A stretch of DNA of 63,691 bases, counting the filler, from Octopus bimaculoides (Eukaryota): NCBI RefSeq assembly GCF_001194135.2. It is 5 parts of 5 records of this genome, joined end to end, with 100 filler letters (N's around TTAATTAATTAA, not from the genome) between each part and the next. Parts side by side here need not be neighbours in the genome. Positions count along the whole stretch, not along the records: positions 1 to 20,873 come from NC_069004.1; 4 more parts are not named here. One strand, given 5' to 3'. Every line of letters starts with the position of its first letter. The first letter of the stretch is position 1. Made by a program: the position numbers and the translations under genes. A model generated the notes under the pieces. The model was not told the DNA's origin and ran no database searches. It saw only the letters and a program-made list of their open reading frames with translations. Below are positions 1 through 20,105 of this stretch, piece by piece.

Positions 1-175
1 TATATATATATATATTAGAATGTTTGGAAGTGATGTGCAGGTATTATATATTAGAAAAAATTAGGTACTCAGAGATTCTGGATGGTTGTACATTTACAGA
101 TTTTTATTAATATGTCACATGTTTTTATAAATCATATATTAGCACTTAAACATATGCGTATATACATATAAATAG

Positions 176-210
<35 letters not shown>

Positions 211-367
211 TTGAAAATGTGTGTAAAAAAATATAAAAAGTGGAAGAGAAATGCCTTCGTTTCATATAGTTTAATATCTTTTTATAAATATATACATATA
301 TGGATGTTGTGAAATCCAACTGGTTTCCGCTATTTAAATTAGCTTTTCAAGGGACATTGTACAGTAA

Positions 368-700
368 TCAGTTCTCGTGACAGAGGGGTTTCATCATTTT
401 GGATGTTTGAAGAATAAGAAGAATGAGTTTAGAGAGTGAACCAAGGGAAGCAACAAGTGGCAAGGGGGACAACTGGCTCCTCAGTAGAATTTTTTTAAAT
501 GGTCTAAGTTGTATATTGAGGTGTGGTCTGTACTTTTGTATGAACAGGTTTTCCTTGTTTAGGCGTTCTTGTACTGAGATTGAATCTTTGCATTGGTATA
601 ATGGGAAGATATGAAAATTAGGCGTTTCTTTTTTTTGCTTGCGCATCTGTCAATGTATCCACTCAGTGCTATCTGCTTGTATTGAGGGAAACGAATCTGT
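368..700 (-). mobile_element. Penelope-like element relic (GIY-YIG C-terminus)
   Basis: FHIFPLYQCKDSISVQERLNKENLFIQKYRPHLN resembles the PLE endonuclease end (F.IFP.Y...R..KE..FI.K..P.LN). Confidence 0.7.
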
Positions 701-772
701 TCTTTATGTAGCATGACTCGGTGTCTCAAAGTAAGGCTCGCTTGGCCAACATAATTGTGACCACAACCTGAG

Positions 773-940
773 CAATTCCCAGGGGCATCCTGTCTTGAAT
801 TCCTCTGTTATTGTCTGGAGGACTATGATAAATAGGAGGGGGTTGAGGACTGAACCTTGGTGGACCCTGACCTCTACCCGAAATTCTTCACTGTACTCGT
901 TGCCAACCCTCACCTTACTGATAGCATCGCTGTACATGGC
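773..940 (-). mobile_element. RTE-clade LINE RT fragment
   Basis: AMYSDAISKVRVGNEYSEEFRVEVRVHQGSVLNPLLFIIVLQTITEEFKTGCPWELL; inverted copy of 3304-3452. Confidence 0.85.
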
Positions 941-942
941 TA

Positions 943-1026
<84 letters not shown>

Positions 1027-1044
1027 TATATATATGTATTTTTT

Positions 1045-2400
1045 TTTATATCTAGTTTCAGCTCACAAGCTGTTGCCATGTTAGGGCACCGCCATTTGGT
1101 GTTGCTACATAATTTTACTTCACGAATGCTTTTTAGGAATTGACATTTGATGCATGAGGGAATTTCATGCTGCTGCCCGCATCTGTACCTCCTGCTACAA
1201 AGTTGGTTCATCTGGGACAGTTAACAGGAAGAGGTCCAGCTTTATTTTGAAGACACCTATATCCACCCCATGCAGGTCTCTCAGGTCCTTCGGGAGGATA
1301 TTGAAGAGCTGTGGACCTCTGAAGCCCAGGGTATTGCAGTATCTTGTCCTAAATCTTGATGGCAAATTTGGAGTCCTTGGCACTATGCAGTGGCGCCCAG
1401 TTCTAGTATTTGTGTAACTCTCGATGCCAAAGTTTGGGACAAGTCCTTCCAGATGTATATTATGTCATATCTTTCTTGCCTATGCTCTAAGGAATAGAGT
1501 TTTAATCTCTTGAGTCTTTCCCAGTAGCTTACTTGCTGCAAAGAGGCTATCTTCTTCATGTAGCTTTGTTGGATTGCTTCAAGTTCTGAGATTAATTTGA
1601 CACTGGTTGGTGACCATAGCTGAGAGCAATAGTCAAAGTGATTTAGGACAAGTGTCTTCCAGAGGACCATCATGGTTTGCTGATCTCTTGTTCTAAAAGT
1701 TCTAAGAATCCATCCAGTCAGCTGCCTGCATTTCATTGCCAACTTAGCAACATGCACATGGAAGGATACATCATTACTCATGGTCTTGCACTGTGTCTCT
1801 GGGATTTCAATCCCTCTAGGTCCAGTGCATTTAATTGGTATTGCATTTAGTTTTGCATACTGATAGCACATGGCTTGAAACTTTTCAGCATTAAACTGCA
1901 TGCTATTCGTTTCAGCCCACTTGTATATTTCATCCAGCTCACATTGCAGGTGCATAGTGTCATCAGGGTTCTGTATCCCGTGAGACTTTTGTATCATCTG
2001 CATAACTTGTGATCGTGGCTCTCTGTGTGGCTGAGGGCATATATGGGTTGGCCATTATGAACAGTAGTGGTCCCAAAACAGTGCCTTGTTGAACACCGCT
2101 CACTATTTGCATGTCATTGGAGGTGACCACATTGGCTACTACCACCTGACTTCTATCCTTCAGGAAGTCATGCAGCCATTCTCCCAATTTTCCAACTATG
2201 CCGAGATCATGCAGTTTATGACATATCCTTCCATGATCGACTTTATCAAAGGCCTTTGCAAAGCCGAGATATATCACTTCCACATTTGAGTGGTTGAGCA
2301 GCTGTTTCAGCACCCATTCATAGTGTTATAAGAGCTGAGTCAGGCAGCTTCTTCCTGGTGGGAAACCATGTTGGGTATATGTGTATATATATATATATAT
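1045..2400 (-). mobile_element. CR1/L2-like LINE, decayed 3' part
   Basis: Frameshifted RT motifs: FAKAFDKVDH, SGVQQGTVLGPLLF, SYADDTK, LNHFDYCSQLWSP, LKLYSLEHRQERYDIIY. Confidence 0.9.
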
Positions 2401-2815
2401 ATNNNNNNNNNNNNNNNNNNNNNNNNNNNNNNNNNNNNNNNNNNNNNNNNNNNNNNNNNNNNNNNNNNNNNNNNNNNNNNNNNNNNNNNNNNNNNNNNNN
2501 NNNNNNNNNNNNNNNNNNNNNNNNNNNNNNNNNNNNNNNNNNNNNNNNNNNNNNNNNNNNNNNNNNNNNNNNNNNNNNNNNNNNNNNNNNNNNNNNNNNN
2601 NNNNNNNNNNNNNNNNNNNNNNNNNNNNNNNNNNNNNNNNNNNNNNNNNNNNNNNNNNNNNNNNNNNNNNNNNNNNNNNNNNNNNNNNNNNNNNNNNNNN
2701 NNNNNNNNNNNNNNNNNNNNNNNNNNNNNNNNNNNNNNNNNNNNNNNNNNNNNNNNNNNNNNNNNNNNNNNNNNNNNNNNNNNNNNNNNNNTATATATAT
2801 ATATATATATATATA

Positions 2816-3017
2816 TCATCATCATCGTTTAACGTCCGCTTTCCATGCTAGCATGGGTTGGACGATTTGACTGAGGACTGGTGAAACCAGATGGCTACAC
2901 CAGGCTCCAATCTGATTTGGCAGAGTTTCTACAGCTGGATGCCCTTCCTAACGCCAACCACTCAGAGAGTGTAGTGGGTGCTTTTACGTGCCACCGGCAC
3001 GAAGGCCAGTCAGGCGG
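2816..3017 (-). mobile_element. RTE LINE 3' end with (ATG)n tail
   Basis: catcatcatcgtttaacgtccgctttccatgctagcatgggttgg..., nearly identical to 16400-16588. Confidence 0.8.
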
Positions 3018-3046
3018 TATATATATATATGTACACACACACACAC

Positions 3047-4485
3047 ATGAAGGTCACAGAGAGGGTCATAGCCCAACTAATTAGGGAGAGAGTCAGTCTA
3101 GATGAGATGCAGTTTGAGTTCATACCAGGGAAAAGCACCACTGATGCTATATTTCTGGTGAGACAGCTGCAGGAGAAATACCTAGCCAAAGATAACCCTC
3201 TGTACCTGGCTTTTGTTGACATGGAGAAAGCCTTCGACAGGGTCCACCGATCCCTTATCTGGTGGTCAATAAGGAAACTAGGGATAGAATGGTTCTGCGC
3301 AAGCCATGTACAGGGATGCTGTCAGTAAGGTGAGGGTTGGCAGTGAAGAATTCCGAGTAAGGATCCACCAAGGATTAGTCCTCACACCCCTCCTATTCAT
3401 CGTAGTCCTCCAGGCAACAACAGAGGAATTCAAGACAGGATGTCCCTGGGAGCTCCTCTATGCTGATGACCTTGCTATAATTGTTGAGTCACTATCAGAA
3501 CTAGAGGAAAAGTTTCAGGTGTGGAAGCAAGGATCAGAATTGGAGGGCCTTAGAGTCGACCTAGCTAAAACCAGAGTAGTAATAAGTAGGAAGGTAGACA
3601 AAACACAAACCCCTTCAGGTAGATGGCCCTGCTCGACCTGTAGAAAAGGCATAGGTAGAAACTACATAAGACGTACCCAGTGTAAGCTATGGACTCATAA
3701 GAGGTGCAGCAATATCAAAGGGAGGCTAACTGGGAAGATAGTTTTTGTATGTGGCAGATGCTCAGAGAACATCTTCCGTCACATTCCATGGAGAAAAACT
3801 AGAAGTAGTTGATAACTTCTGTTACCTAGGGGACCAAGTCAGTAGCAGGGGTGTAAGCTTGCAAGGAATGAACCCAGTATGCTCCTCTGGATGTGTAATG
3901 TCAGTGTGCATACACAACAGAGTGTAAGCAGCCTGAGAGAAAAGTTGGATTTAAGAAGCATCAGATGTGGTGAGCAAGAGAGATGACTGCCCTGGTATGG
4001 TTATGTGTTGCGAATGAATGAGGACAGCTGTGTCAAAAAGTGTCACACCCTAGCAGTTGAGGGAATCTATGGAAGAGGTAGACTCAAAACCTGGGATGAG
4101 GTGGTGAAGCATGACCCTCGAATATTAGGCCTTACCGAGGCAATGACTAGCAACTGGGACCTTTAGAGATATGCTGTGCTTGAGAAGACCCAACAAGCCA
4201 AGTGAGACCATAGCCCGTGGCCTATGCCAGTGGGTGTAACCAGTTCACTTATGAGTACCCCTCATTCATTGGACAATGAACTTTGCTTGTGAAGATCTAT
4301 TGAAGCAAGTGTAAACAAATCAAAATCACTGAAGTGGCTGATGACAGTACCACCTGATAGGCACTCGTGCCAGTGGAATGTTATAAGCACATCCGAGCAT
4401 GATCGTTGCTGTGGTTGGCATTAGGAAGGGCATCCAGCTGTAGAAACTCTGCCAGATAAGATTGGATCCTGGTGCAGCCATCTGG
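3047..4485 (+). mobile_element. RTE-clade LINE, degenerate RT through 3' UTR
   Basis: KSTTDAIFLVRQLQEKYLAK...AFVDMEKAFDRV, PWELLYADDL and a C-rich RWPCSTCRKG...QCKLWTHKRCS segment; internal deletions and stops. Confidence 0.9.
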
Positions 4486-4915
4486 CGAGAAAGATATGCC
4501 ATAATATACATCTGGAAGATCCTGGAGTGACTTGTCCCAAACTTTGGCATTGAGAGTTACACAAATACTAAAACAGGGCGCCACTGCATAGTGCCAAGGA
4601 CTCCAAATTTGCCATCAAGATGTAGGACAAGATACTGCAACAGCCTGGTCTTCAGAGGTCCACAGCTCTTCAGTATCCTCCTGAAGGAGACTTGCATGGG
4701 GTGGATGTAGGTGTCTTCAAAATGAAACTGGACCTCTTACTGTTAACTGTCCCAGATGAACCAATTTAACAGCAGGAGATGCAGATGAGGGCAGCGGCAT
4801 GAAATTCCCTCATGCACCAAATGTCAATTTCTAAAAAGAATTAGTGAAGTAAAATTATGTAGCAACACCAAATGGCAGTGCCACAGCTCATGAGCTGAAA
4901 CTAGATCAAATCAAA
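4486..4915 (+). mobile_element. CR1/L2-like LINE 3' end
   Basis: Reverse complement of ~1050-1480 with scattered mismatches; ends gagctgaaactagatcaaa. Confidence 0.85.
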
Positions 4916-5063
4916 TCAAATGATACCTATACATACACACATATATACACAAAACCGTTATGAGTATATACATATAAATATGTATGAGGCAGTTGCGTGC
5001 GTGCGTTTGTGATACATAATAACTGTAGGGGTAAGAATTTCATATATTGATTTGAATATTTTT

Positions 5064-5580
5064 TTTTCCCACGAGAGTTCCAGACCACAGTTATGAACTC
5101 ATTTGCATACAGCCAATCAGAGCTATCAAACTAATTTATGAGCGTATAACAAGTGATGGGCGATAAGATAAGGTCATTTGGGTAAGGAATGACCATACTT
5201 CTTTTCTCTTTTAATAATGCATATGTTCTTGTTCTTGTTTCAACCATGGCTGCCTGAGTATTTTTCTCCTGTTGTTGTTTACTTTCTAAAACAATAAGGG
5301 GAGAGGGTTGCTAGCACATCACTCTCTACCCATATTTTCCCCCATCCATATCTTTACCATATGGGGCCCTAACAAAATCCAATAATAAATATAGATGCAA
5401 ATCTATCTAATTACTTGTCTCCTTCTAAAATGAGGCATAACTTGGCGACACCACCATTCTTCGTCTCGAGTATATTTATTTGGTAGAGTGTATTTGTTAA
5501 CTTGACAAGGTCACGGTGAGCTCTGACTGGTTGTATGCAAATGAGTGCATTACTGGGGTCCGGAACTCTCGTGGGGAAAA
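5064..5580. repeat. 61-bp inverted repeat pair (5064-5124 / 5519-5580) carrying the octamer ATTTGCAT
   Basis: ttttcccacgagagttccagaccacagttatgaactcatttgcatacagccaatcagagct vs the reverse complement of 5519-5580: 6 mismatches and 1 indel. Confidence 0.9.
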
Positions 5581-6059
5581 GAAATTTCGCGGCCGGCTGC
5601 ATCTAGGTCATGACCTTTGCTGGCATGTTCTATTTTTAACCCTTGTAGATAGTTAAGGTGCCCCAGATTCAAGGTACCTTGGTATTGTAACCAGTTAATT
5701 CGAAAACGCCTTTTGAAATTCATTTCCATTAATACTTTATATTACTGCAAGCAGTTTGATCATATAGAAAGGGTGCCCTTCGATATTTTGAATACTGCAG
5801 ATAAAAAACATCTGACAATGGGAGGACCAATGTAATGGCACGAACGAACAAGGGATGTCATAAAGCAGCTTGTTTTAACCCTCTAAAGTTAAGATGCAGA
5901 AGTTAAAACAAATTAGTTTTCAGTTTCGCTTGTCGAAGTATCAGTTTTCGTTTCCTTAAAAATATCTGAATAAATGGAATTTATATATTTTTGTTAATTC
6001 ATTTCTTAAATGTCACATTATCACTGTTCTAATTATATACCAAATACATACATGTCAGT

Positions 6060-6275
6060 GTGTGTGTGTTTGTGTTTCTCCACAGCTAGACATACGGTGT
6101 TGGTTTGTTTACGTATCAGCAACTTGGAGATTCAACAACAGAGGCCGATAAAATAAGTATCTGACTTTAAAAAATAAGTACTGGGAGTCGATCTGTTTGA
6201 CTAAAAACCCTTTCAAAGCGGTGCCCCTGCATGGCCACAACCCAATGACTGAAACAAGTAAAAGATTTTTTAAAA
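6060..6275 (+). mobile_element. SINE 3' half (abundant family with internal TG microsatellite)
   Basis: Matches the 3' module of 14087-14490 and 35039-35722; ends gactgaaacaagtaaaaga. Confidence 0.75.
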
Positions 6276-7231
6276 AATTTAATTATTTATTTTTTTAAAA
6301 GATAAGATAGTTGATAATAGCTCGATCAGAGAGAAAGAGAGGCTGTGTGACCTCATGTCACAGTAAAAACTCCTTGTTATATATTGGAGATGGCCAGCAT
6401 CGCCTAAACTTGACTTGTTTTTCAAGTTTCGTCCGTCTCAGCTCTGAGTTAAAATACTGCAGGATGCAGGGATCGATACATTAAGTGCCAGTACTACGAT
6501 CGATCCTTCCCTTCTAATGTTGGTCTTAACAAAAGAAATGATTATTACTGATAGAAATAACAGGCTCTCATTGGAAATTAAAATTTCGCAAGAACATAGA
6601 TATTTAAAAGACTGGATGTTTTATATATTCAGAATAGGCAAGTGACACAAACTTATTTATATCAAATAAATGGTACAAGCGCCAATGATTCTCCGAGGAT
6701 GCCTCCACGTTTTTACTCCACTTTCCAGAATTGGTAGTCAAAGCTCCCTCAGAGCATAACCCCTAGTCTTGAAAGCTGTATAAGGTTCTACTTATATAAA
6801 AAAGCGGTGTAGTTAAAGCAGGAACACTTTTGATTATAGATCTGCATGACCAGGACAAATCTGGGGGTTAAATAACCACTACAACAAGAAACCTAATTAA
6901 TTAAGTAATTACGTAAGAACACATGTAAACTATTTCGAGCAAAACAGATGCTGCATAGATTTAAGTAATTTATTTCTGATAATTATATATTAGAAGCGGA
7001 ATTAATAACCGAAGGTAATTAGATTACAATAAAAATAGCTTTGGCAATAAATATTTATTAAAGACTCAAGTAACTTTCAATCAAAATAAACAGTCACACT
7101 GTTGATATCAAAGCATGCTTTCGTTCTCAGGATAGTTTAGTTAAATACTTATTCTAATTAACTAAAATAGAAGTTTTCCTAATTTCCTGTAAATGTGTAT
7201 GTGCTTGTCTACTAATTGAATGTTCACTTAC

Positions 7232-7314
7232 CGAAAGTTATATGTTTTAAACTTTTGAGATTCCCTCAACATTTTCTTATACAACGTGAGAACGCGTGTC
7301 CTCGTTGCAGACAT
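7232..7314 (-). CDS. LYRM4: LYR motif-containing protein 4 (ISD11, Fe-S cluster assembly), first coding exon
   Basis: Minus strand reads ATG TCT GCA ACG AGG ACA CGC GTT CTC ACG TTG TAT AAG AAA ATG TTG AGG GAA TCT CAA AAG TTT AAA ACA TAT AAC TTT CG|gtaagt = MSATRTRVLTLYKKMLRESQKFKTYNFR, closely matching the ISD11 N-terminus (human [29 protein letters not shown], from memory). Perfect gtaagt donor, phase 2. Later exons not seen in the window. Confidence 0.93.
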
Positions 7315-7489
7315 TCTGGTCTGTTATCACAGGAAGTGGTGCTGCCTTTGGTGCTCACCACGCGACTGGCGTGCGGCGTGTTTATATAATACGTGTGTAT
7401 ATGTGTGTGTATGTAAGTATATATATTTACAAACACATGTTTATATATATGTATTTAATCCCTTTATAGGTAAGAATACCGTATTTGTG

Positions 7490-7538
<49 letters not shown>

Positions 7539-8052
7539 GTGTGTATATATACATATATATATATACACACGCACACGTGTGTGTATGCTAATACAGTAGT
7601 GAGATCTGAAAGGTCGTGGTAAATGCAGTTGTTTAACTTCTAGCATCGACAAAGCTTGTATAGAAAACACAAAGAAGACGATAATTGATCAGTACAGCTA
7701 ATTAGGCAATTGTCGTTTATTAATCAATGTATTGATACACTTCGTCCCATATCGAAATTAGAAATTCCAGTTAGGGAGAGGTTGTAAACAACGTATTGGT
7801 TTTTATTTCGGAATAATAACAATTTCTTTTTCTCAAAATCCACAGTTCATTTATTATTATTAAAAAAATTAGAAAACAGAAAGTTTTCAAAAAAAAAAAA
7901 CCCAGCATGAAATTAAAATTAATTTGTACAGCAACGTTCTTCTGAGTACCTGTTCCGTTGTTTACTGACCCAAACACTCCGCCGTTTTCACTATTTAACT
8001 CGATAACTGTTTGTATATATTTGTCCGCTGATTAGTTTGGTAAATTGTCAGG
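7315..8052. promoter_or_regulatory. Probable bidirectional promoter and 5' UTRs of LYRM4 and FARS2
   Basis: 738 nt between divergent start codons. CpG-containing patches at both ends (7290-7380, 7960-8030), an ETS-type CAGGAAGTG at 7330-7338 and a TA/TG microsatellite at ~7390-7590. TSSs not determinable. Confidence 0.7.
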
Positions 8053-8069
8053 ATGGTTGTAATGCATAG
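8053..8069 (+). CDS. FARS2: FARS2 predicted first coding exon (MVVMH-R, 17 coding nt)
   Basis: ATG GTT GTA ATG CAT AG|gtaaga: phase-2 donor that matches the phase-2 acceptor at 12889/12890 (AG+G = Arg). It supplies an in-frame Met, which the 12890 exon lacks before the conserved core. Confidence 0.72.
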
Positions 8070-8275
8070 GTAAGATTTGCTCTTATTTGAAAAATATATA
8101 TAATATTAATATTGTCCAACCAGTGTCAACTCTGTCTTTCACTGTTTCGGGATCGCTAGCCCCTGGATGCTTTAAAGGAGCTGTTTGGGTAGCGAACCAC
8201 GAAACGGGGTTGGAATTCCAGTCGAGTACTGGCATCATCTCAAATTTTAGTCTTGTATCTCAGTTAGAAATAATC

Positions 8276-8413
8276 CACTGGTTCCCAACCCTTTTATCGA
8301 AATGAGTTTTCCCACGGACCCCTTTTAATATGCTTATCCTTATATATGAAATTTTGAATTTAGTTCACGCACCGTTAGTACTACCTTTGCGGACCCCTGG
8401 TTGAGAACCACTG
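8276..8413. mobile_element. hAT-type MITE with 8-bp TSD
   Basis: TIRs cactggttcccaacc / ggttgagaaccactg; identical 8-mer aaataatc at 8268-8275 and 8414-8421. Confidence 0.9.
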
Positions 8414-8558
8414 AAATAATCGATTATAGCAATAATAATAATTACAATTATTCTCATAAAACAGAAGGATGGAATAAACGGATGGAACGACGAAATGCTT
8501 TGCAGACGAAATGCTTTACAACCCCTTTACGTTCCAGTTAAAATCCGCCAAGGTCGAC

Positions 8559-9255
8559 TCTACGCAAGTGTGCCCCATTGATTTTGTTTGCACATAACCT
8601 TCTGAAAAATGGATATTTTTTTGCGTAATTTTCTACAAATACGTTTCAGATGGTGTGGATAACGATTATATTGAAATTTGTTGTTCAAATCTCTTCAGAT
8701 CTGGATAAGAGGAGTTTCGAATAACTTACACGCTTCGACTTCGTTTCCTCTTACATTATGATGATAAAGATTACAATTACGTTGAAAAGAAACATTAAAA
8801 AAAAACTTTCCCTTTGGACCATTCCACCCTTTCCTTTTTGGAATTTGTTTATTGTTTTTTTTTTTTAAATAAAATTTTCCAGGCCTACAGCATACCAAAA
8901 AGCCATACCAACAAATTCACGTCTGATAATTTTTGTTTTCAAATTATACCGGTTTCTCTGGAAAATTTCATTTCATTAAAAAAAATACCCATTTAACAAA
9001 TTCCGGAAGAGAAAGGTGAGAAAGGAACTTCAAAAGTTTTTTTTATTTTCAGCATAATTGTAAAATTGAAATCTACATCATTAAAACGCTCGAGGAAAAG
9101 TCGAGGTTCGTGAAATATTGCCCTCCACCCAGTTGTTGTGTTTATTTTTACTTTATAACCTGATGTACAATGTCTGAAAGGTTTTTGTAGAAAGTTTCAA
9201 TAAAAAATACTTATTTACTGTAAGTTATGAGGAGACCAAGTCGAGTGGTGCACGC
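8559..9255. mobile_element. Possible old non-autonomous DNA transposon
   Basis: Weakly complementary ends (gtgtgccccatt...cataacc / ...gttatg...agtggtgcacgc) around an AT-rich interior; no TSD confirmed. Confidence 0.35.
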
Positions 9256-9513
9256 CTATGTTATATCGACGTTGGTTATTCCGCATCACTCCTTAAAAAG
9301 CACAGGGCCGGATTATCGGTGGCATATATGTCAATACAATGGGTTGAATTGTGAGCAGGTGACAATTCAATCAACAACTATGTGATGGAGCGTGCAGTGT
9401 AAAACCGTAGACAATAGTCTTAATAAAATGTAGGCTGGACTGGTTTCTTGTAGCTCTTCTTCCAGTTCATGTGAGTCTTGGTAATCATCATCATCATCAG
9501 CATTATCATTTAA

Positions 9514-9720
9514 CCCTTTTGATACTAACCCTCCCTAGACTCTTTGACATAAATTTATTGTTTTAAAGTGGTCTCAATTATAATCTTTTAAAATTTTATG
9601 CTAATTTGTTCCAGACGCCATCTTAATAATGAGAAAGCTATTTTACTAAATTCTTTATTATATTAAAAATTTATTGACACAATGGCAGCATATGTTAACA
9701 GAAATATGGTAACAAAAGGA
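9514..9720. mobile_element. piggyBac-type MITE nested in an RTE 3' end
   Basis: TTAA at 9510-9513 and 9721-9724; ends cccttttgatac / gtaacaaaagga. Removing it restores the RTE tail catcatc...tttaacatccattttccatgctggcatgggttgg. Confidence 0.8.
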
Positions 9721-9869
9721 TTAACATCCATTTTCCATGCTGGCATGGGTTGGATGGTTTGACAGGAACTTGCATGCCAGAAGGCTATGCCAGACCCCAG
9801 TCATCTGTTTTAGCCTGGTTTCTATAGTTGGACACCCTTCCTAACGCCAATCATTTTACAGAATGTACT

Positions 9870-10110
9870 GGATGCTTTTTTCATGGTGCTGGAACACTGC
9901 TTTTCTGTGTGGTGCAGGCATGAGTTTGCTTTTTATGTGACTCCAGCATGGGTGCTCCTAACGTGTTGTGCTTTCTACATGGCACCAGTACAGGTGCTTT
10001 ATATGTGGCACTGGCATGGGTACTTTTACATGGCACTGGTACAGGCGCCGTTTACATGGTATCAGTATGGGTGTTATTTATGTGGCACCAGCACCTACAG
10101 GTTCACCAAA
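9870..10110. repeat. Degenerate ~30-bp tandem array in RTE-associated sequence
   Basis: About 7-8 units resembling gtgctttttatgtggcaccagcatgg. Confidence 0.7.
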
Positions 10111-10559
10111 TGACTTGCAAGACAAAGACGTCTCAGCTGAGAGAGGGAGAGGTACTGAAATAAGTGGCTATGTGTCGGGTGAGAAGTTGGATTATGATAG
10201 AGGGTCAGGGGTAGCTTTCTTACTGCAGAGGAGATACTTGGCTACTCCTGTAGGACAAGGAAGAAGAGAGAAACTGGAGAGAGAGAAGGAAGGATAGAGA
10301 CAGTCAGAGTCTGAGAGAGAAGTCTTACGCAAAGGGAACAATTGAGGGAGATTATAAGTAGCATAGAGGGGACAGAGGAGATATCTAGAGATAGCAAGTG
10401 ATGTTGAGAGTTACTGGAAGAGTCTGTAGTGGGTGGTGGGAGTTTTGAGGAGATGGTTGTGGGTGAGTTTTGCCAGAGAACAGAGTTATGCATGTGTGTA
10501 GGGGAAAAGTAGTTATGGCCATATAGCACGTCTCTATGTATAGATGGCCCCGATTTTAC

Positions 10560-11170
10560 TTAGCTTAACATGTCTTCTCAAGCTCAGCAAATTGCTAGAA
10601 GTCTTGATCCCTTGTCATCTCAGTGGCTTTAAATATCTGAAGATCCTTTCTCACCACTTCGTCCCAAATCTTCCTGAGTCTACCTCTTCAACAGGTTTTC
10701 TGTGCAATTAGAAATTGGCACTTCTTTATGCAGCTCTCCTCCTCTATATGCATCACATGACTACATCAGCACAGTCTCCTCTCTTGCTCACTATATTTAA
10801 TGCCTTTTATACCCAATTTTTCTCTTAAGTCATTTACACTCTGCTGTACATGCGCTCTGACATTACTCATCTGGCAGAGTATGCTGGCTTCATTTCTTTC
10901 AAGTCTTTGCATGTCCTCTGTAGTCACAACCCATATTTCACTGCCATATAGCATAGATGTTTGTACACAGGCATCATACAATCTACCTTTCACTCTGAGG
11001 GAGAGGCCCTTTGTTATCAACAAGGTAACAGCTCTCTGAAAGGTAATAGCTCTCTGAATTTTGCCCAGCCTATTCTTATTCTAACAATTACGCTCTCAGA
11101 GTTTCCTCCTTCACTGCTAACTTGGTCACCTAGGTAATGAAAACTATCTACTACTTCTAAGGATCCCAAT
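10560..11170 (-). mobile_element. RTE LINE RT C-terminal fragment
   Basis: KGLSLRVKGRLYDACVQTSMLYGSEIWVVTTEDMQRLERNEAS; same family as 17539-17915. Confidence 0.85.
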
Positions 11171-11620
11171 GGATATTTGAGTTAGCCTATTTTCTGTACA
11201 TCCCTAGTGTTTATTGTACCTGCACATCTGCCAAACCTAAAGACAAATAATATCAAACAATGACAACATAGAGTAGTGAGTGCTCTCTTTTCATCTGCTA
11301 GATGAGCCATGATGAAATGCACCATGTACATTCTGTAAAAAGGTTGACAAATGAGCAGAGACAGCAAAGGGTTGAGGGGATCTATTGGTCTTGTCAAGGA
11401 CATGACAACATCTCTTGTGCTAATGCAACAATCAAATGCATCCAGTACACTCTAAATTGTGGTTAATATTTGAAAGGGCATGTCTAGCATCACTGTTCCA
11501 AAAATGGAAGTGAGACCTGGTCTTCTGACTTGTGTAGGAGTGCAGTAACACCAAATAAGAATTGATTTGGATCTTGGCAAACTGTCCCATCCATACCATC
11601 ATAGAAAGTAAGTGTAAAAT

Positions 11621-12255
11621 GATGATGGTGTTGATAATGAAGAAAGAAAAGGTGAAGTTGATTTAAGTTGGACCTGAACTCACAAGAAGTAGCATAACCC
11701 ACCATTGTTAAAATAAACAAGCTTTTCCTGATGAACTGAACTTCTCTGTTGTACATAATTACAATTAAGTGTGCTCTGTAAAATTACTGCCTGTAATTGA
11801 ACCTTATAACAGAGAAAGCTATCGCTAAAAAAAGCTGATAAGAGTACTAGCATTAAATTGCACGAGACAGCTGTGCTGGGTGCTCTACGAAACACACATC
11901 ATCCACTCCAAATGGCTCTATCCATTTAGTTTAGTTCAGTATTGTAAGCAGAAGAGTTAAAGCTGCTCCCCCTGATGAAGACAACTGGCCTGCAAGAGTC
12001 TTGTGCTGGTACTATGTAAAAAGCACCCATGTCAGTGCCATGGAAAAGTGCGATAGCTTTCTCTGTTACAAGGTTTAATTGCAGGCAGTAATTTTACAGC
12101 GCACACTTAACTGTAATTATGTTCAACAGAGAAGTTCGGTTCATCAGGAAAAGCTTGTTTATTTTAGCAATGATGGGTTATGCCACATCATGTGAGTTCA
12201 GGTTCCCCCTTAAATTAATTTTACCTTTTCTTTCTTCATTATCAACACCATCATC
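11621..12255. repeat. Long foldback / MITE-like element, ~205-bp arms (11621-11825 and 12050-12255)
   Basis: Arms are reverse complements along their length, e.g. aaataaacaagcttttcctgatgaac / gttcatcaggaaaagcttgtttattt. Confidence 0.9.
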
Positions 12256-12599
12256 GTTCTTCAGGAAAACCACACTGTAATATGAATGTCTTCTAACATT
12301 ATTTATACTAGCAGAAGAACCACCCTGCAAACAGTGAGACTGGACAAATGCCACAAAGCATTATATCCAAAATGCCATCTATTTATGAAAAAAATAAAGG
12401 GAGACAGTATACCAGACAAAATGCCTTGTAGTATTTGTTCTGGTTTTTTACAATCTGATTTCTAAGTTAGTTTTTACTTTCATCCTTCCAGGTTCAGTAA
12501 AATATAAGTACCAGCAAGTACTAGGGTTCATTTAATTGATTACTTCTTCACAAATTTGTGACTGTAACTTTGTTTGAAATTATTATTTACTGTATATAA

Positions 12600-12785
12600 G
12601 GTGATGAGCTGGCAGAATCATTAGCACATTGGACATAACAGTATTTCATCCATCTCTACCTTCTGAGTTCAAATTTCACTAAGTTTGACCTTCCCTTTTT
12701 TCCTTTCAGGGTTGATAAAATAAGTACCAGCTGAGCACTTACCCTCCCCTCCCCTTAAATTGTTGGCTTTATGTTAAAATTTGAA
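12600..12785 (+). mobile_element. tRNA-derived SINE with an aggtcgactttgcctttcatcc...gataaaataagtacc-type core (Meta-SINE-like)
   Basis: Same family at ~15260-15465 (+), ~52300-52470 (-), ~58030-58170 (-) and several copies in 63110-63691 (-). Superfamily assignment is from memory. Confidence 0.7.
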
Positions 12786-12889
12786 ATCTTTATTTATTCT
12801 ATATTGCTTGACTTTATTACACACATTGTGTGTTGGAAACCGTTTTTAAAAAGCTTAATTCCAAAAATATTTGCTTTTTCTCATTTCAG

Positions 12890-13454
12890 GTATTCACTAT
12901 ATTTATTTCACTGGCGTTCGAAATGTTCTTTGTCACGACGATTCACAAGTTCATGTGTATTTAACAGTAAGCAACATACAGACAATAAATCCATTACCAT
13001 CTTGGATAAGCATTATCCCAGAGATTCAGTAACTAACGTTAGTGAAAGTATAGTTTCAAAAATTGGAGAGAACCTTCACAACAAGAAACACCACCCACTT
13101 AACTTAATTCGTCAGCAAATACAGTCATTTATATACAGCTATTTTAGAAACTCACGAGGTAACCCTCTATTTTCAATCTATGACAACCTTAGTCCTGTGG
13201 TCACCACATGGCAAAATTTTGACAGTCTTTTGGTTCCTACTGACCATGTGAGCCGAAAAGTCAGTGACAGTTACTATATTAATTCCAACTTGATGCTCAG
13301 AGCCCACACATCAGCCCATCAGAGTGATCTTATACGATCTGGATTGGATGCGTTTCTAGTGATCGGTGATGTTTATCGCCGTGATTCTATCGACCAATCT
13401 CATTTTCCAGTGTTTCATCAAATTGAAGGAGTTCGACTCTTTACACAACACACG
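12890..13454 (+). CDS. FARS2: Mitochondrial phenylalanyl-tRNA synthetase, large exon (presequence plus catalytic motifs)
   Basis: Acceptor ttgctttttctcatttcag|, donor |gtaagt at 13455 (phase 0). Encodes ...NLHNKKHHPL...LSPVVTTWQNFDSLLVPTDHVSRKVSDSYYIN...MLRAHTSAHQ...GDVYRRDSIDQSHFPVFHQIEGVRLFTQHT, diagnostic of mitochondrial PheRS (class II motif 2). Confidence 0.97.
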
Positions 13455-14086
13455 GTAAGTAGAAGGTTTCTTCAGAGATTTTAGGTCCTCCTCTGCTGCT
13501 CAGCACATTATGCAGCAAGTTTCCTCCATTAGGTTTGAGTCAGTTGCTACTCTTGCATGTCCATTCCATGTAATGTTGACTGTCTTCAGGTCATCTTGAA
13601 ATGTCTACTTCCGAGGGATCTAGCCTGCTCCTTTTATGCTTGCTGACAAGCTGTATCCAAGTCAAAGTAGTTTTCAAGTGCCATTGACTGGCTAGACTGA
13701 GAATGTTGCTAGCCTGGTGGAATTGGCACTCTGCTACAATCTCTTGCAGTGCTTATAACCTTCCTCTTCTTAGAATCTTCTCAGGTGTGACACTGTGCCA
13801 CCAGTTGACCCTTAGGATCTTTCTGAGTCACCTTTGATGGAATACATTTAGTATTTTTACCTGTCCTTACTGCCCTTTCAAGTCTCACTTTGTGGGCTAA
13901 GAAGATTTTTTTAATCATTTGAGCCAAAATATCATCATCATCATCATTGTTTTAATTTTCATCCTCTCCACATCCTTTGCTCCTCCTCTACTCTTCACTC
14001 TTTCTCCTTCCACCCTCCTCCTCTTCCCCCATCCTCATCATTGTTGCCATTGTCAACATCATCATCTTAATCTTTATTGTCAACAT

Positions 14087-14490
14087 AGGTGCAGGCGTGG
14101 CTGTGTGGTAAGAAGTTTGCTTCCTAACTACATGGTTCAGGGTTCAGTCCCACTGTTGGGCAAGTAACTTCTGTTATAGCTTTGGGCCAACCAAAGACTT
14201 GTGAGTGGATTTGGTAGTTGGAAACTGAAAGAAGCCTGTTGCATTTGTTTATGTATATATATGTATGTGTGTCTGTGTTTGTTCCCCACCACTGCCTGAC
14301 AACTGGTGTTGGTGTGTTTATGTCCCTGTGGTTTGGTAAAAGAGACTGATAGAATATATGCCAGGCTTAAAAAAGAAAAAAAAAGAAATAAGCCCTGGGG
14401 TTAACTCATTCAGCTAAAAGTTCTTCAAGTTGGTGTCCCAGCATGGCCACAGTTTAATGACTGAAAGCAAGTAACAGATAAAAGGTAAAA
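14087..14490 (+). mobile_element. Full-length tRNA-derived SINE with internal (TA/TG)n
   Basis: Head ggctgtgtggtaagaagtttgc...ggttcagtcccactg (box A/B-like), central microsatellite, 3' tail ...ccagcatggcc...gactgaaa...taaaag. Lies in FARS2 intron 2. Confidence 0.85.
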
Positions 14491-14889
14491 GGTAATCTCT
14501 CACCATCAAATGTACACTTGCTGTTCTGCCTCTATGTATATCATAGACACACAGAACAGAGTAAACAAAAGAGCTTCTATATAGCCACATAATCTGCTAA
14601 AAATAACAGCCAAATTTCTTTCAAACTGCACTCTACTGGCTTTAAAAAAGAGCAAGGACACATTGGATAATGTAATCCTAGGTAGACATTACCTAAGAAA
14701 GTCAGGGTGACTCTAACTAGAATGCCTTTGATCATAGAGTTACGCATTCAGGGTTGTCCTGAAACTAAGCAATATAAGTAGTTGATGCAGACACACCTGG
14801 CATATGTGTGTGTGTGTTGGAATACAATAACTTTTATATCTCTTTCCAGTGTTTATTTAACATTGTATGTCCTCTTATGTTTGTTCCAG

Positions 14890-15040
14890 TTGTATCAGAA
14901 TGACAACAACCAGTGTCTCTTTGAGGAAGGGGAAAGATTGGATGACAAACAAGCCTATCACAGAAGGGAAATGGTCAAACTAATAGAAGAAGACTTGAAA
15001 ACTTGCTTGCTAAACTTAGCAATCCATTTATTTGGTACCA
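14890..15040 (+). CDS. FARS2: FARS2 next exon (151 nt)
   Basis: Acceptor ttgttccag|, phase 0. LYQNDNNQCLFEEGERLDDKQAYHRREMVKLIEEDLKTCLLNLAIHLFGT matches the FARS2 LFE...KQ..H..E.VKL.E.DLK..L..L..HLFG segment. Donor A|gtaagt at 15041, phase 1. Confidence 0.95.
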
Positions 15041-15774
15041 GTAAGTAGGTTTTATAATACATATGAAAGTATATTTCAATCAAAGCAAAAAAAAACTTCA
15101 ATGAACCCCCTTTCATTAAAATTTCAGGCCTTGTACCTGTATTAAAAACAACTATTATCATTAAAGTGGTTGGTGTTAGGAAGGGCATTCAACTTAAAAA
15201 CCATGCCAAAGTAAATATTGGAGCTTGATACAGTCTTTGGACACATCGGTTCCTATCAACCTAGCAGAATCATTAGTATACCAGACAAAATGCTTAGTGG
15301 CATTTTATCTACCTCTACGTTCTGGGCACAAATTCCACTGAGGTTGACTTTGCCTTTCATTCTTTTGGGGTTGATGAAATAAGAACCAGTTAAGCCCTAG
15401 CTTTGATGTAATTGACTAGCTCCTTCCCCACCAAGATTTCAGGCCTTGTGCCTATAATAGAAAAGATTATTATTATTATAGTTTGTATATTTCACTTCTC
15501 AGATCTCTAAATTTCATTTGTTCTGGCTAATTCTGTAAGAGTGTATGACAAACTTTCTCAAAGGTCTTACAGGATCTCTTTCTACAATACTTAACACCCA
15601 TGTACTAATCTGAAGATCTTTGCTGTTCTCAGTAAAGCAGTTTATTGAGCATGTTCTTCTGCCATGTCAATTCTAATTTCTCCATTAAATTTCTCAAACT
15701 TTGTTCTTAATGCTGATAGTGCTCCTGCCAATTACTAGTATGACAGTTACATGCCCCTACAACTATTATTATTA

Positions 15775-16325
15775 TTATTGAATGAGAGAGCAATGCATGC
15801 CATTAAAGTGACACTGGGGTAAAATATACGAAGCCCAGTATACCCATCATGATTATCCGTCTGATAAGGGGACACCAGGCACATGCATCACAACCATATG
15901 GTGATCTCATATCAAGAGTAAACAGTGCATGACCTTGCAGGTGGGGCCCAGTTAGAATTTTCTTCAGGTTGAGTAGCCCATTCTGCCCAAAAGGTCCCTG
16001 AATAAGGGTTGTTTAAAGATGTTAAATGAAACACCCATGTTTCCACGGGTGAATTATCCCAACCCCAAATAATTCCTCTCAACACATAGCTATGATGCTT
16101 CCCCACTACTTTTGCTCGTGATCAGAGATGCACATATCGTCAGCCACCAAGAGACATGCTCAACTGGTTATGGTCAAACAACTGACGAGCAAATCTGTAG
16201 TATTGAGCAGAATATTTACTGCAGCCCATCTTTTATACCAAGACAAAACGATGTCCATGATAATACTTCCAATCAGTTAAGAGCAGAATCCATGAGGGCC
16301 AGTGTCTGGGACTGCATCAGGGCAT
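15775..16325 (-). mobile_element. Interspersed repeat flanked on both sides by (ATT)n, probable LINE 3' UTR
   Basis: (att)n runs at ~15763-15778 and ~16326-16343 bracket ~550 nt of complex sequence; family assignment uncertain. Confidence 0.45.
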
Positions 16326-16394
16326 TTATTATTATTATTATTACTAGCTGACCCTGTGTCAAAAAATGATGGCTAATTGTAGTATTTTATATAT

Positions 16395-17915
16395 CATCAT
16401 CATCATTATCATCATCGTTTAACGTCCGCTTTCCATGCTAGCATGGGTTGGACGATTTGACTGAGGACTGGTGAAACCGGATGGCAACACCAGGCTCCAG
16501 TCTGATTTGGCAGAGTTTCTACAGCTGGATGCCCTTCCTAACGCCAACCACTCAGAGAGTGTAGTGGGTGCTTTTACGTGTCACCCGCNNNNNNNNNNNN
16601 NNNNNNNNNNNNNNNNNNNNNNNNNNNNNNNNNNNNNNNNNNNNNNNNNNNNNNNNNNNNNNNNNNNNNNNNNNNNNNNNNNNNNNNNNNNNNNNNNNNN
16701 NNNNNNNNNNNNNNNNNNNNNNNNNNNNNNNNNNNNNNNNNNNNNNNNNNNNNNNNNNNNNNNNNNNNNNNNNNNNNNNNNNNNNNNNNNNNNNNNNNNN
16801 NNNNNNNNNNNNNNNNNNNNNNNNNNNNNNNNNNNNNNNNNNNNNNNNNNNNNNNNNNNNNNNNNNNNNNNNNNNNNNNNNNNNNNNNNNNNNNNNNNNN
16901 NNNNNNNNNNNNNNNNNNNNNNNNNNNNNNNNNNNNNNNNNNNNNNNNNNNNNNNNNNNNNNNNNNNNNNNNNNNNNNNNNNNNNNNNNNNNNNNNNNNN
17001 NNNNNNNNNNNNNNNNNNNNNNNNNNNNNNNNNNNNNNNNNNNNNNNNNNNNNNNNNNNNNNNNNNNNNNNNNNNNNNNNNNNNNNNNNNNNNNNNNNNN
17101 NNNNNNNNNNNNNNNNNNNNNNNNNNNNNNNNNNNNNNNNNNNNNNNNNNNNNNNNNNNNNNNNNNNNNNNNNNNNNNNNNNNNNNNNNNNNNNNNNNNN
17201 NNNNNNNNNNNNNNNNNNNNNNNNNNNNNNNNNNNNNNNNNNNNNNNNNNNNNNNNNNNNNNNNNNNNNNNNNNNNNNNNNNNNNNNNNNNNNNNNNNNN
17301 NNNNNNNNNNNNNNNNNNNNNNNNNNNNNNNNNNNNNNNNNNNNNNNNNNNNNNNNNNNNNNNNNNNNNNNNNNNNNNNNNNNNNNNNNNNNNNNNNNNN
17401 NNNNNNNNNNNNNNNNNNNNNNNNNNNNNNNNNNNNNNNNNNNNNNNNNNNNNNNNNNNNNNNNNNNNNNNNNNNNNNNNNNNNNNNNNNNNNNNNNNNN
17501 NNNNNNNNNNNNNNNNNNNNNNNNNNNNNNNNNNNNNNGGTTGTTCGTACGCATGCGTCATACAGTCTGCCTTTTACTCTGAGTGAGAGTCCCTTTGTCG
17601 CCAGCAGGGGTAAGAGCTCTCTAAACTTTGCCCAGGCTATTCTTATTCTAGCAGCTACACTTTCAGCGCACCCACCCCCACTACTAACTTGGTCGCCCAG
17701 ATAGCGGAAGCTATCGACTACCTCTAGTTTTTCACCCTGGAATGAGATAGAAGTTGTTTCCTGTTTGTTTGCAGTCTTTATTGCACCTGAACATCTGCCA
17801 CAAACAAAAACTAACTTGCTAGTTAACCTGCCTTTGATGTTGCTGCACCTCTTATGTGTCCATAGCTTGCACCGGGTACATCTTATAGAGTTACTACCTA
17901 CTCCTTTTCTACGGT
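16395..17915 (-). mobile_element. RTE LINE copy spanning an assembly gap
   Basis: RT C-terminus (RCKLWTHKRCS...GLSLRVKGRLYDACVRT) at 17539-17915 and the 3' UTR with (ATG)n tail at 16395-16588 on the same strand. Confidence 0.85.
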
Positions 17916-17964
17916 ATAATATAAGGTACATAATAATCATACATACAAACATTCACATCCTTAT

Positions 17965-19535: not shown

Positions 19536-19719
19536 TCATCATCATCATCATCATCATCATTATTAATACGCCGACTTATTGTTTTTGTATGTGCGTACCT
19601 GTGATGTGTGTCACACTTACTTCAAAGGAAGAAGTGAGTGGCAAAGCAGGCGAGAGAAGGACAGAGAGGAAGTGAGAGTGAAAGAGACAGTGAGTGGTGA
19701 CAGTATATATATATATACA

Positions 19720-20105
19720 TGATGGGCTTCTTTCATCTTCCAGCTACAAATTCTACTCACACGGCCTTGGTTGGCCCAAGGCTATAGTAGAAGATACTTG
19801 CCCAAGGTGCCACACAGTGGGACTGAACCTAGAACCATGTGGTTAGTAAGCAAGCTACTTATCACACAGCCACTCCTGTGTCTATATATATGTGTGTGTG
19901 TGTGTGTTTGTGTTTGTCCCCCACCGCCACCATTGCTTGACAACTGATGTTGGTGTGTTTCATCCCCATAATTTAGCAGTTCGGCAGAAGAGACTGATAG
20001 AATAAGCATCAGGCTCACAGAGAATAAGTCCAGGGTTAATTTCTTCAACTAAAGGGCCATGCTCCAGTATGGCCACCGTCAAATGACTGAAACAAGTAAA
20101 AGAAT
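19720..20105. mobile_element. SINE halves in opposite orientation joined at a microsatellite
   Basis: 5' module on - (19720-19880), 3' module on + (19900-20105). Confidence 0.8.

What the first reader, a model, noticed from the sequence alone, without database searches (positions are those of the whole stretch)
7232..8069. Head-to-head LYRM4-FARS2 pair in a probable cephalopod, mirroring the human locus
Seen: the LYRM4 ATG (7314, -) and the predicted FARS2 ATG (8053, +) face away from each other 738 nt apart. Neither first exon is in the ORF track. Established: human LYRM4 and FARS2 are divergently transcribed neighbours on chr6. Inference: if this is a mollusc, the arrangement may date to the bilaterian ancestor and survive heavy TE invasion. 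It would couple Fe-S cluster assembly (NFS1-ISD11-ACP) with mitochondrial translation. I do not know whether this has been reported.
Basis: partly seen in the sequence, partly recalled or inferred. Interest (0 to 1): 0.75.

Follow-up and report, generated by a model that had tools for sequence, protein, structure and literature searches.

The report
Octopus LYRM4–FARS2 divergent gene pair
Two nuclear genes for mitochondrial proteins, LYRM4 and FARS2, sit back-to-back 738 bases apart in Octopus bimaculoides just as in humans; the pairing looks as old as bilaterian animals, but it is one more example of a known kind of conserved gene pair.

Summary
The window is 100% identical to Octopus bimaculoides chromosome CM046624.1. 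Positions 7314..7232 (-) encode the first 28 residues of the NCBI-annotated O. bimaculoides LYRM4-like protein, an exact match. FARS2 coding exons lie on the + strand at 12890..13454 and 14890..15040.

It is orthologous to the annotated FARS2 start codons of O. vulgaris and O. sinensis (MVVVLHR, in-frame indel, donor kept). One conflict remains: the GenBank O. bimaculoides FARS2 CDS range begins at 7411, at a non-conserved AT|GTAAGT.

The same divergent adjacency occurs in a scorpion (631 nt between the two ATGs) and in humans. In the bivalve Solemya velum I found only a frameshifted LYRM4-like exon 2 upstream of FARS2. The adjacency is absent within 10 kb in Trichoplax, Lingula, Acanthaster, Helobdella and Daphnia. 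A bilaterian origin with repeated loss is the simplest reading.

Functional coupling through a shared promoter is inferred, not shown. The human bidirectional promoter and the class of ancient head-to-head pairs are already published. I rate it a new member of a known kind, of modest interest.

The parts
7232..7314 (-). LYRM4 (ISD11) coding exon 1, codons 1-28 plus 2 bases of a split Arg codon; donor CG|GTAAGT
   Evidence: (exact match to annotated O. bimaculoides LYRM4-like P0298). The intron sits at the same position and phase in scorpion, Lingula, Trichoplax and Acanthaster.
7315..8052 (.). 738-nt divergent intergenic spacer, the presumed shared or abutting promoter region of LYRM4 and FARS2
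   Evidence: Orthologous spacers are 864 nt (O. vulgaris) and 876 nt (O. sinensis). No TE-sized insertion relative to the sister species.
7331..7339 (+). CAGGAAGTG, an ETS/GABP-like motif 17 nt upstream of the LYRM4 ATG, identical in three Octopus species
   Evidence: Consensus match only; binding not tested.
7411..7412 (+). AT|GTAAGT: first CDS bases of FARS2 in the GenBank O. bimaculoides annotation (start codon split by an intron, or an alternative 5' exon). Not conserved in O. vulgaris or O. sinensis.
   Evidence: gene ranges are CDS-based; TATATA in the sister species; donor ranks 10th.
7496..7565 (.). (TA)n microsatellite inside the spacer, variable in length between species
8053..8069 (+). 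FARS2 first coding exon, 17 nt (MVVMH + AG of Arg), donor AG|GTAAGA, Kozak-like context gtcaggATGG
   Evidence: (orthologous annotated starts ATGGTTGTTGT[C/A]CTGCATAG|GTAAGC)
8070..12889 (+). FARS2 intron 1 (4.8 kb). It contains a ~2.0-kb insertion (10121..12166) absent from O. vulgaris and O. sinensis, with a LINE-like ORF and an internal inverted repeat.
12890..13454 (+). FARS2 coding exon 2 (188 codons plus 1 base); presequence and start of the class II core domain
   Evidence: PF01409, 66.7 bits against cutoff 19.8
14890..15040 (+). FARS2 coding exon 3
1..7231 (-). Part of LYRM4 intron 1. Positions 1..4692 are LINE reverse-transcriptase debris with no colinear counterpart in O. vulgaris. 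LYRM4 exons 2-3 lie beyond the window.
   Evidence: RVT_1 hits at 1963-2313, 2978-3812

Best explanation
This is the 5' junction of two divergently transcribed nuclear genes for mitochondrial proteins in Octopus bimaculoides. LYRM4/ISD11, the partner of the NFS1 cysteine desulfurase, reads leftward from 7314. FARS2, the mitochondrial phenylalanyl-tRNA synthetase, reads rightward from a 17-nt first coding exon at 8053..8069, which is spliced over a 4.8-kb intron to the large exon at 12890. Shown: gene identities, orientation, spacing and gene structure. Also shown: the same head-to-head adjacency in three Octopus species, a scorpion and humans, with partial evidence in a bivalve. Inferred: the pair was already adjacent in the bilaterian ancestor and has been lost repeatedly. 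Inferred, and least certain: it persists because the two core promoters share or interdigitate within a spacer under 1 kb, as in the documented human bidirectional promoter. On that view a breakpoint or TE insertion there would damage one or both housekeeping genes, and both are driven by common factors, possibly ETS/GABP-type.
For: The window equals O. bimaculoides CM046624.1. LYRM4 exon 1 is identical to the annotated protein, whose full product hits PF23511 ISD11. FARS2 exons were found by tblastn and Pfam. Public gene calls show FARS2 and LYRM4 head-to-head in O. bimaculoides, O. vulgaris and O. sinensis. The mini-exon ATG, reading frame (3-nt indel) and donor are kept in the sister species, and it has the best donor among 202 candidates. 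The alternative in-exon ATG at 12771 is absent from O. vulgaris. In the scorpion, LYRM4 exon 1 lies 631 nt upstream of FARS2 and divergent from it. In Solemya, a LYRM4-like exon 2 lies 5.5 kb upstream of FARS2 on the opposite strand. The human bidirectional promoter is reported in PMC12167029, PMC3488223 and PMC12672016 Table S1 (TSS distance 94 bp). The general phenomenon of ancient head-to-head pairs kept by shared cis-regulation is described in PMC3514665. A conserved CAGGAAGTG sits next to the LYRM4 ATG.
Against: No transcript or TSS data were available, so promoter sharing and co-expression in octopus are untested. Sequence identity of the spacer between Octopus species (about 91% in alignable blocks) equals the intron baseline (about 90% excluding gaps), so no excess constraint is measurable. 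The pair is broken in Trichoplax, Lingula, Acanthaster, Helobdella and Daphnia, so coupling is not essential. The O. bimaculoides GenBank CDS range for FARS2 starts at 7411 rather than 8053. Solemya exon 1 was not found, and its exon 2 carries a frameshift.
Confidence: 0.7

Rival explanations
1. Neutral persistence. The pair is ancestral but survives only because a spacer under 1 kb offers a very small target for rearrangement breakpoints. There is no shared regulation and no functional link between Fe-S assembly and mitochondrial translation.
For: The pair is lost in 5 of 7 tested non-octopus invertebrate lineages, with LYRM4 paired to unrelated genes (eIF6, a THAP gene, an unknown gene) in Lingula, Daphnia and Helobdella. 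The spacer is no more conserved than introns among Octopus species. A variable microsatellite and indels split the spacer into a LYRM4-proximal and a FARS2-proximal block, which fits two separate core promoters.
Against: Cephalopods disrupted over half of ancient bilaterian microsyntenies (PMC6386654), yet this pair survived. Neighbouring introns took up kilobase-scale TE insertions while the spacer did not. In humans the two genes are reported to share a bidirectional promoter (PMC12167029). Head-to-head ancient pairs as a class show elevated co-expression (PMC3514665).
Confidence: 0.3
2. FARS2 in O. bimaculoides actually starts next to LYRM4. An exon ending at 7412 (AT|GTAAGT) supplies the first two bases of a start codon completed by G at 12890 or 8052. 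Transcription of the two genes would then begin within about 100 nt or overlap, and 8053..8069 would be an alternative or internal exon.
For: The public CDS range for the 436-aa FARS2 product ends at L003 9904, which is window 7411. Ten gene-range ends checked in these tables coincide with ATG or stop codons. AT|GTAAGT sits exactly at 7411 and is phase-compatible. Human FARS2 has an untranslated first exon close to LYRM4 (PMC3898479).
Against: The 7411 donor lies in TG/TA low-complexity sequence and is replaced by TATATA in O. vulgaris and O. sinensis. Its donor score ranks 10th. A 436-aa length fits MVVMHR+188+242, the O. vulgaris exon lengths minus one codon, better than a split ATG joined to 12890, which gives 431 aa. 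Both sister annotations start at the 8053 orthologue.
Confidence: 0.2
3. Convergence. LYRM4 and FARS2 became neighbours independently in vertebrates, chelicerates and molluscs.
For: Patchy distribution: absent in the echinoderm, brachiopod, annelid, crustacean and placozoan tested.
Against: For one specified pair among roughly 2x10^4 genes, chance adjacency in divergent orientation is of order 10^-5 per genome (my estimate). It would have to happen three times with a spacing of 0.6-0.9 kb each time. Randomised gene orders give about 0.015 conserved pairs in PMC3514665.
Confidence: 0.03
4. The 7232..7314 ORF is another LYR-family gene or a dead exon, not LYRM4.
For: It is only 28 residues, and LYR proteins share the motif.
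Against: It matches the annotated O. bimaculoides LYRM4-like protein exactly, and that protein's gene call continues to exons ending ...KLVIE* and hits PF23511 ISD11. Only LYRM4 matches in the PDB. The intron position and phase are conserved. It is syntenic with FARS2.
Confidence: 0.01

Closest known systems
Human LYRM4-FARS2 bidirectional promoter locus (6p25.1)
   Same: The same two orthologous genes in the same divergent orientation, with 5' ends less than 1 kb apart. FARS2's large conserved exon is reached by splicing from a tiny or non-coding first exon. Both products are mitochondrial.
   Different: Human FARS2 exon 1 is wholly untranslated (PMC3898479), whereas octopus exon 1 appears to carry the ATG and 5 codons. 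Human TSSs are reported 94-400 bp apart, and octopus TSSs are unmapped (the ATGs are 738 nt apart). The octopus spacer is AT-rich (32% GC) with a (TA)n microsatellite; I found no GC-rich motifs (Sp1, NRF1) in it.
Conserved ancestral microsyntenic pairs (CAMPs) of Irimia et al. 2012, e.g. HSPE1-HSPD1
   Same: Unrelated genes, head-to-head, with a short spacer, shared between protostomes and deuterostomes and repeatedly lost in some lineages. HSPE1-HSPD1 is likewise a pair of nuclear genes for mitochondrial proteins.
   Different: I documented the pair in three major lineages, one fewer than the four that definition requires. HSPD1 and HSPE1 act in one complex, whereas LYRM4 and FARS2 have no known direct functional link. 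I could not check whether the pair is in the published CAMP list, because the supplement is not held.
Human divergently-paired genes (DPGs), PMC12672016
   Same: FARS2-LYRM4 is listed as a human protein-coding DPG with a TSS distance of 94 bp (Table S1).
   Different: That study compared only yeast, fly and worm among non-vertebrates, and its invertebrate table does not contain the pair. The mollusc and chelicerate occurrences shown here lie outside its sampling.

Membership tests
LYRM4 / ISD11 (LYR-motif protein, NFS1 partner) | N-terminal L-Y-R/K tripeptide with a downstream conserved Phe (Complex1_LYR domain) | tested here: met
   LYK at residues 11-13 and F at 22. Pfam PF05347 scores 27.6 bits against cutoff 24.8 on the 28-aa exon alone.
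LYRM4 / ISD11 (LYR-motif protein, NFS1 partner) | Orthology to LYRM4 rather than to other LYR paralogues | tested here: met
   PDB phmmer: LYRM4 chains at E=3e-5, next protein at E=1.3. Exact identity to the annotated O. bimaculoides LYRM4-like protein, whose product hits PF23511 ISD11. Phase-2 intron in the YN[FY]R Arg codon, shared with scorpion, Lingula, Trichoplax and Acanthaster LYRM4.
LYRM4 / ISD11 (LYR-motif protein, NFS1 partner) | Binds and stabilises NFS1 together with acyl-ACP | not testable with these tools
   Biochemical property, inferred from orthology only.
FARS2 (monomeric mitochondrial phenylalanyl-tRNA synthetase) | Class II aaRS core domain of the PheRS alpha type (tRNA-synt_2d) | tested here: met
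   PF01409 scores 66.7 bits against cutoff 19.8 on exon 2. tblastn against human FARS2 gives E=1e-62 at 54% identity.
FARS2 (monomeric mitochondrial phenylalanyl-tRNA synthetase) | C-terminal FDX-ACB anticodon-binding domain on the same chain | tested here: met
   This lies outside the window, but the public 436-aa gene call spanning it lists PF01409 and PF03147. The same holds for the 437-aa O. vulgaris and O. sinensis products.
FARS2 (monomeric mitochondrial phenylalanyl-tRNA synthetase) | N-terminal mitochondrial presequence | tested here: inconclusive
   The predicted first 39 residues have 7 basic residues, 1 acidic residue and 9 Ser/Thr, which is presequence-like. No targeting predictor was available, and the start codon itself is a model.
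Bidirectional (divergent) gene pair | Opposite strands, 5' ends facing, less than 1 kb apart, no intervening gene | tested here: met
   The start codons are at 7314 (-) and 8053 (+) with 738 nt between them, so the TSSs must lie within that interval or overlap. No ORF or Rfam hit of note lies in the spacer.
Bidirectional (divergent) gene pair | Shared promoter activity or co-expression | not testable with these tools
   No RNA-seq, CAGE or reporter data. The only lead is a conserved ETS-like motif.
Conserved ancestral microsyntenic pair (CAMP, PMC3514665) | Non-paralogous neighbours linked in at least 4 of the major metazoan lineages sampled | tested here: inconclusive
   Linked in vertebrates (literature), molluscs and chelicerates, which makes 3 lineages. 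Not linked within 10 kb in placozoan, brachiopod, echinoderm, annelid and crustacean.

The most novel reading that the evidence does not exclude
LYRM4-FARS2 is an unreported urbilaterian (over 550 My old) bidirectional-promoter pair. Selection for co-regulating Fe-S cluster biogenesis with mitochondrial translation has kept it in vertebrates, chelicerates and molluscs, even through the cephalopod genome reorganisation that broke most ancient microsynteny.
Probability: 0.25. Interest if true: 0.45.

Novelty: new member of a known kind. Interest (0 to 1): 0.3.

Why it matters
If the pair is ancestral and kept by a shared promoter, it adds a second mitochondrial example, after HSPD1-HSPE1, of very old head-to-head gene pairs. 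It would offer a compact (under 1 kb) natural test case for how nuclear genes for different mitochondrial pathways are co-regulated. It would also be a useful anchor in the heavily rearranged, TE-rich cephalopod genomes. It has some bearing on the human 6p25.1 locus, where promoter variants and deletions affect both genes. The practical gain is small: both genes are already annotated in public octopus genomes, and the phenomenon is well described.

Tried and rejected
(1) Looking up the 237-aa raw ORF at 12771..13484 and the Haliotis isoform X2 FARS2 in the contig index found nothing on record.

(2) The FARS2 protein search returned no octopus protein. The best hits were 65-69% identical Logan fragments, so it could not settle the N-terminus.

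(3) The first LYRM4 profile search, which included the human sequence, was swamped by mammalian isoforms. A probe made of octopus exon 1 plus scorpion exons 2-3, aligned with scorpion and Solemya sequences, gave the diverse hits used later. This is a search device, not a real protein.

(4) I first read the scorpion FARS2 start as a mini-exon. Translation shows a continuous ORF from its ATG, so that parallel is withdrawn.

(5) Solemya LYRM4 exon 1 was not found by regex, a small HMM or tblastn.

(6) The coral Stylophora LYRM4 is not on record, so no cnidarian was tested.

(7) Cross-Octopus conservation of the spacer is no higher than the intron baseline, so it cannot be used as evidence of constraint.

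(8) Rfam found nothing in the window. The promoter scanner offered is bacterial and was not used.

(9) Literature: no paper holds both LYRM4 and 'microsynteny'. The Davila-Lopez 2010 supplements do not mention either gene. The Irimia 2012 supplement is not held. 'C6orf149' gave nothing relevant.

Full report
WHAT IS THERE

The window (1..20873) is 100% identical, in reverse orientation, to Octopus bimaculoides chromosome record CM046624.1 of assembly GCA_001194135.2. The mapping is locus L003 position = 17315 - window position.

LYRM4

- On the minus strand, ATG at 7314 opens MSATRTRVLTLYKKMLRESQKFKTYNFR. The exon ends after 7232 at a CG|GTAAGT donor.
- tblastn against human LYRM4 gives E=4.6e-7.
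- In a search of all PDB sequences, only LYRM4 chains match (E=3e-5). The next protein has E=1.3.
- Pfam Complex1_LYR passes its curated threshold on these 28 residues alone.
- The peptide is identical to residues 1-28 of the NCBI protein 'LYR motif-containing protein 4-like [Octopus bimaculoides]'. It differs at two positions from the O. vulgaris orthologue.
- The public gene call for that protein starts at exactly this ATG, spans 20.5 kb and hits the ISD11 Pfam family.
- The intron splits the Arg codon of the YN[FY]R motif after two bases. The position and phase are the same in scorpion, Lingula, Trichoplax and Acanthaster LYRM4.
- LYRM4 exons 2 and 3 lie beyond the left edge of the window, and tblastn finds none inside it.

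FARS2

- On the plus strand, a large exon (acceptor cag|G at 12889/12890, donor ACG|GTAAGT after 13454) matches human FARS2 residues 34-205 at 54% identity, E=1e-62. It hits tRNA-synt_2d.
- A second exon (14890..15040) matches residues 205-256.
- After the acceptor, the large exon has no in-frame ATG, and it needs two bases from an upstream exon. The start codon is therefore upstream.
- I enumerated all 202 ATG-to-GT phase-2 candidates between 7315 and 12889. This exon has the best donor score on a simple position weight matrix.
- In O. vulgaris (OX597837.1) and O. sinensis (CM016882.1), the annotated 437-aa FARS2 CDS begins with ATGGTTGTTGT[C/A]CTGCATAG|GTAAGC (MVVVLHR). This aligns base-for-base with 8053..8069 apart from an in-frame 3-nt indel, and the flanks are conserved.
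- The alternative unspliced ATG at 12771 is not an ATG in O. vulgaris.
- The predicted N-terminus is basic, Ser/Thr-rich and almost free of acidic residues, as expected for a presequence.

One conflict in the annotation

The O. bimaculoides gene table gives a 436-aa FARS2 product whose CDS range begins at window 7411, only 96 nt from the LYRM4 ATG.

- At ten other gene ends I checked, these ranges begin at ATG or end at the stop codon, so they are CDS-based.
- At 7411 the sequence is AT|GTAAGT. That implies a start codon split by an intron, or an alternative 5' exon.
- This donor lies in TG/TA low-complexity sequence and is TATATA in both sister species. It ranks 10th by donor score.
- A length of 436 aa equals 6+188+242, which is the MVVMHR model with O. 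vulgaris-like downstream exons. A split ATG joined to 12890 would give 431 aa.
- I suspect the range is the union of two annotated isoforms, but I could not see the feature table.
- Either way, the FARS2 5' end is at or closer than 738 nt to LYRM4, so the head-to-head claim stands.

DISTRIBUTION

Public gene calls show FARS2 (-) and LYRM4 (+) head-to-head in all three Octopus genomes. The ATG-to-ATG spacers are 738, 864 and 876 nt.

Lineages with the adjacency outside Octopus:
- Scorpion, Centruroides sculpturatus. An unannotated LYRM4 exon 1 (MAAARSEVISLYRQLLKESRQFSSFIYR, same donor phase) lies 631 nt upstream of the annotated FARS2 ATG and divergent from it. Exon 2 lies further on the same strand.
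- Bivalve, Solemya velum. A LYRM4-like exon 2 lies 5.5 kb upstream of FARS2 on the opposite strand. It carries a frameshift, and I could not find exon 1.
- Humans. The pair shares a bidirectional promoter (PMC12167029, PMC3488223; TSS distance 94 bp in PMC12672016 Table S1), and FARS2 exon 1 is untranslated (PMC3898479).

Lineages where no FARS2 lies within 10 kb of LYRM4, by annotation and by tblastn:
- Trichoplax, two strains
- Lingula
- Acanthaster
- Helobdella
- Daphnia

In Lingula (eIF6), Daphnia (a THAP-domain gene) and Helobdella (an unknown gene), another gene occupies the head-to-head position.

Presence in Deuterostomia, Ecdysozoa and Lophotrochozoa, at 0.6-0.9 kb in the same orientation, is best explained by adjacency in the bilaterian ancestor followed by several losses. 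Independent assembly of one specified pair three times is very improbable. I could not test any cnidarian, so an older origin is open, and Trichoplax lacks the adjacency.

TE CONTEXT

Relative to O. vulgaris, O. bimaculoides has several kilobase-scale additions near the spacer:
- window 1..4692 in LYRM4 intron 1 (LINE reverse-transcriptase fragments, RVT_1)
- about 2.0 kb at 10121..12166 in FARS2 intron 1
- about 0.85 kb at 13897..14746 in intron 2

LYRM4 spans 20.5 kb here, against 5.0 and 4.7 kb in the sister species. The spacer itself has only a variable (TA)n microsatellite and small indels.

However, with four or five insertions in 20 kb, an empty 0.74-kb spacer is expected by chance.

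HOW IT LIKELY WORKS

Two housekeeping nuclear genes for mitochondrial proteins are transcribed away from a common spacer under 1 kb.

The alignment splits the spacer into three parts:
- a LYRM4-proximal block (7315..7378) containing a CAGGAAGTG ETS/GABP-type match conserved in all three species
- a variable microsatellite region
- a long FARS2-proximal block (7575..8052)

Identity in the alignable blocks (about 91%) equals the intron baseline (about 90% excluding gaps). These species are therefore too close to show constraint.

Shared or interdigitated promoters that penalise breakpoints are the mechanism proposed for such pairs in general (PMC3514665). I consider this the most likely reason for retention. 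A purely neutral small-target explanation is a serious rival, given the many losses. Functional coupling of Fe-S assembly to mitochondrial translation is an inference with no direct support here.

COMPARISON AND NOVELTY

- The human locus is known.
- The class is known: 595 conserved ancestral microsyntenic pairs, most of them 5'-5', with HSPE1-HSPD1 as the mitochondrial example (PMC3514665).
- Cephalopods are reported to have lost over half of ancient bilaterian microsyntenies (PMC6386654), so survivors are of some interest.
- In the searchable literature I found no statement that LYRM4-FARS2 specifically is conserved beyond vertebrates.
- The CAMP supplement could not be read.
- The octopus genes are already annotated side by side in public records.

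I rate this a new member of a known kind, of modest interest.

Noticed in passing
window 7411-7419: The GenBank O. bimaculoides FARS2 CDS range starts at an AT|GTAAGT inside TG/TA repeat sequence, implying a start codon split by an intron. It is not conserved in O. vulgaris or O. sinensis and may be an annotation artefact or a lineage-specific alternative 5' exon.
   Followed up: partly
L001 4427-4545 (Solemya velum JBHNWI010000006.1): The LYRM4-like exon upstream of FARS2 changes reading frame between ...DNKEITD and IQGLIKRAEENLEIIKRQV, and no exon 1 was found. This could be an assembly indel, an unannotated gene or a decaying copy.
   Followed up: partly
L008 7535-10001; L011 8992-10001; L010 6137-10001: Where FARS2 is not the neighbour, LYRM4 is still head-to-head with another gene: eIF6 in Lingula (194 nt), a THAP-domain gene in Daphnia (225 nt) and an unknown 178-aa gene in Helobdella (1.3 kb). 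The LYRM4 promoter may be generally prone to divergent pairing.
   Followed up: no
L004 6795-7736 and L005 6797-7837 (Trichoplax): The gene just upstream of LYRM4, on the same strand, is PDCD9/MRPS30, a mitochondrial ribosomal protein. That is a different mitochondrial-translation neighbour from FARS2.
   Followed up: no
window 10121-12166: A ~2-kb insertion in FARS2 intron 1, absent from O. vulgaris and O. sinensis. It carries a LINE-like ORF (10766-11023, related to the ORF at 17539-17952) and a ~91% inverted repeat (11618-11825 against 12050-12255).
   Followed up: partly
window 1383-3812, 16552-17952, 18797-19342, 20618-20873: Several degraded LINE reverse-transcriptase ORFs (RVT_1) on both strands, with repeated segments such as 2792-2998 matching 16388-16588 in inverted orientation at 95%. 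Typical of the octopus repeat load.
   Followed up: partly
window 2403-2791 and 16589-17538: Assembly gaps (runs of N) flanked by TA microsatellite or TE sequence. Six-frame ORFs across them are artefacts.
   Followed up: yes
P0001: The top FARS2 database hit, Pteropus alecto 'Phenylalanyl-tRNA synthetase, mitochondrial', contains an internal duplication of about 125 residues, probably a gene-model error. This inflated its score to 403 bits.
   Followed up: yes
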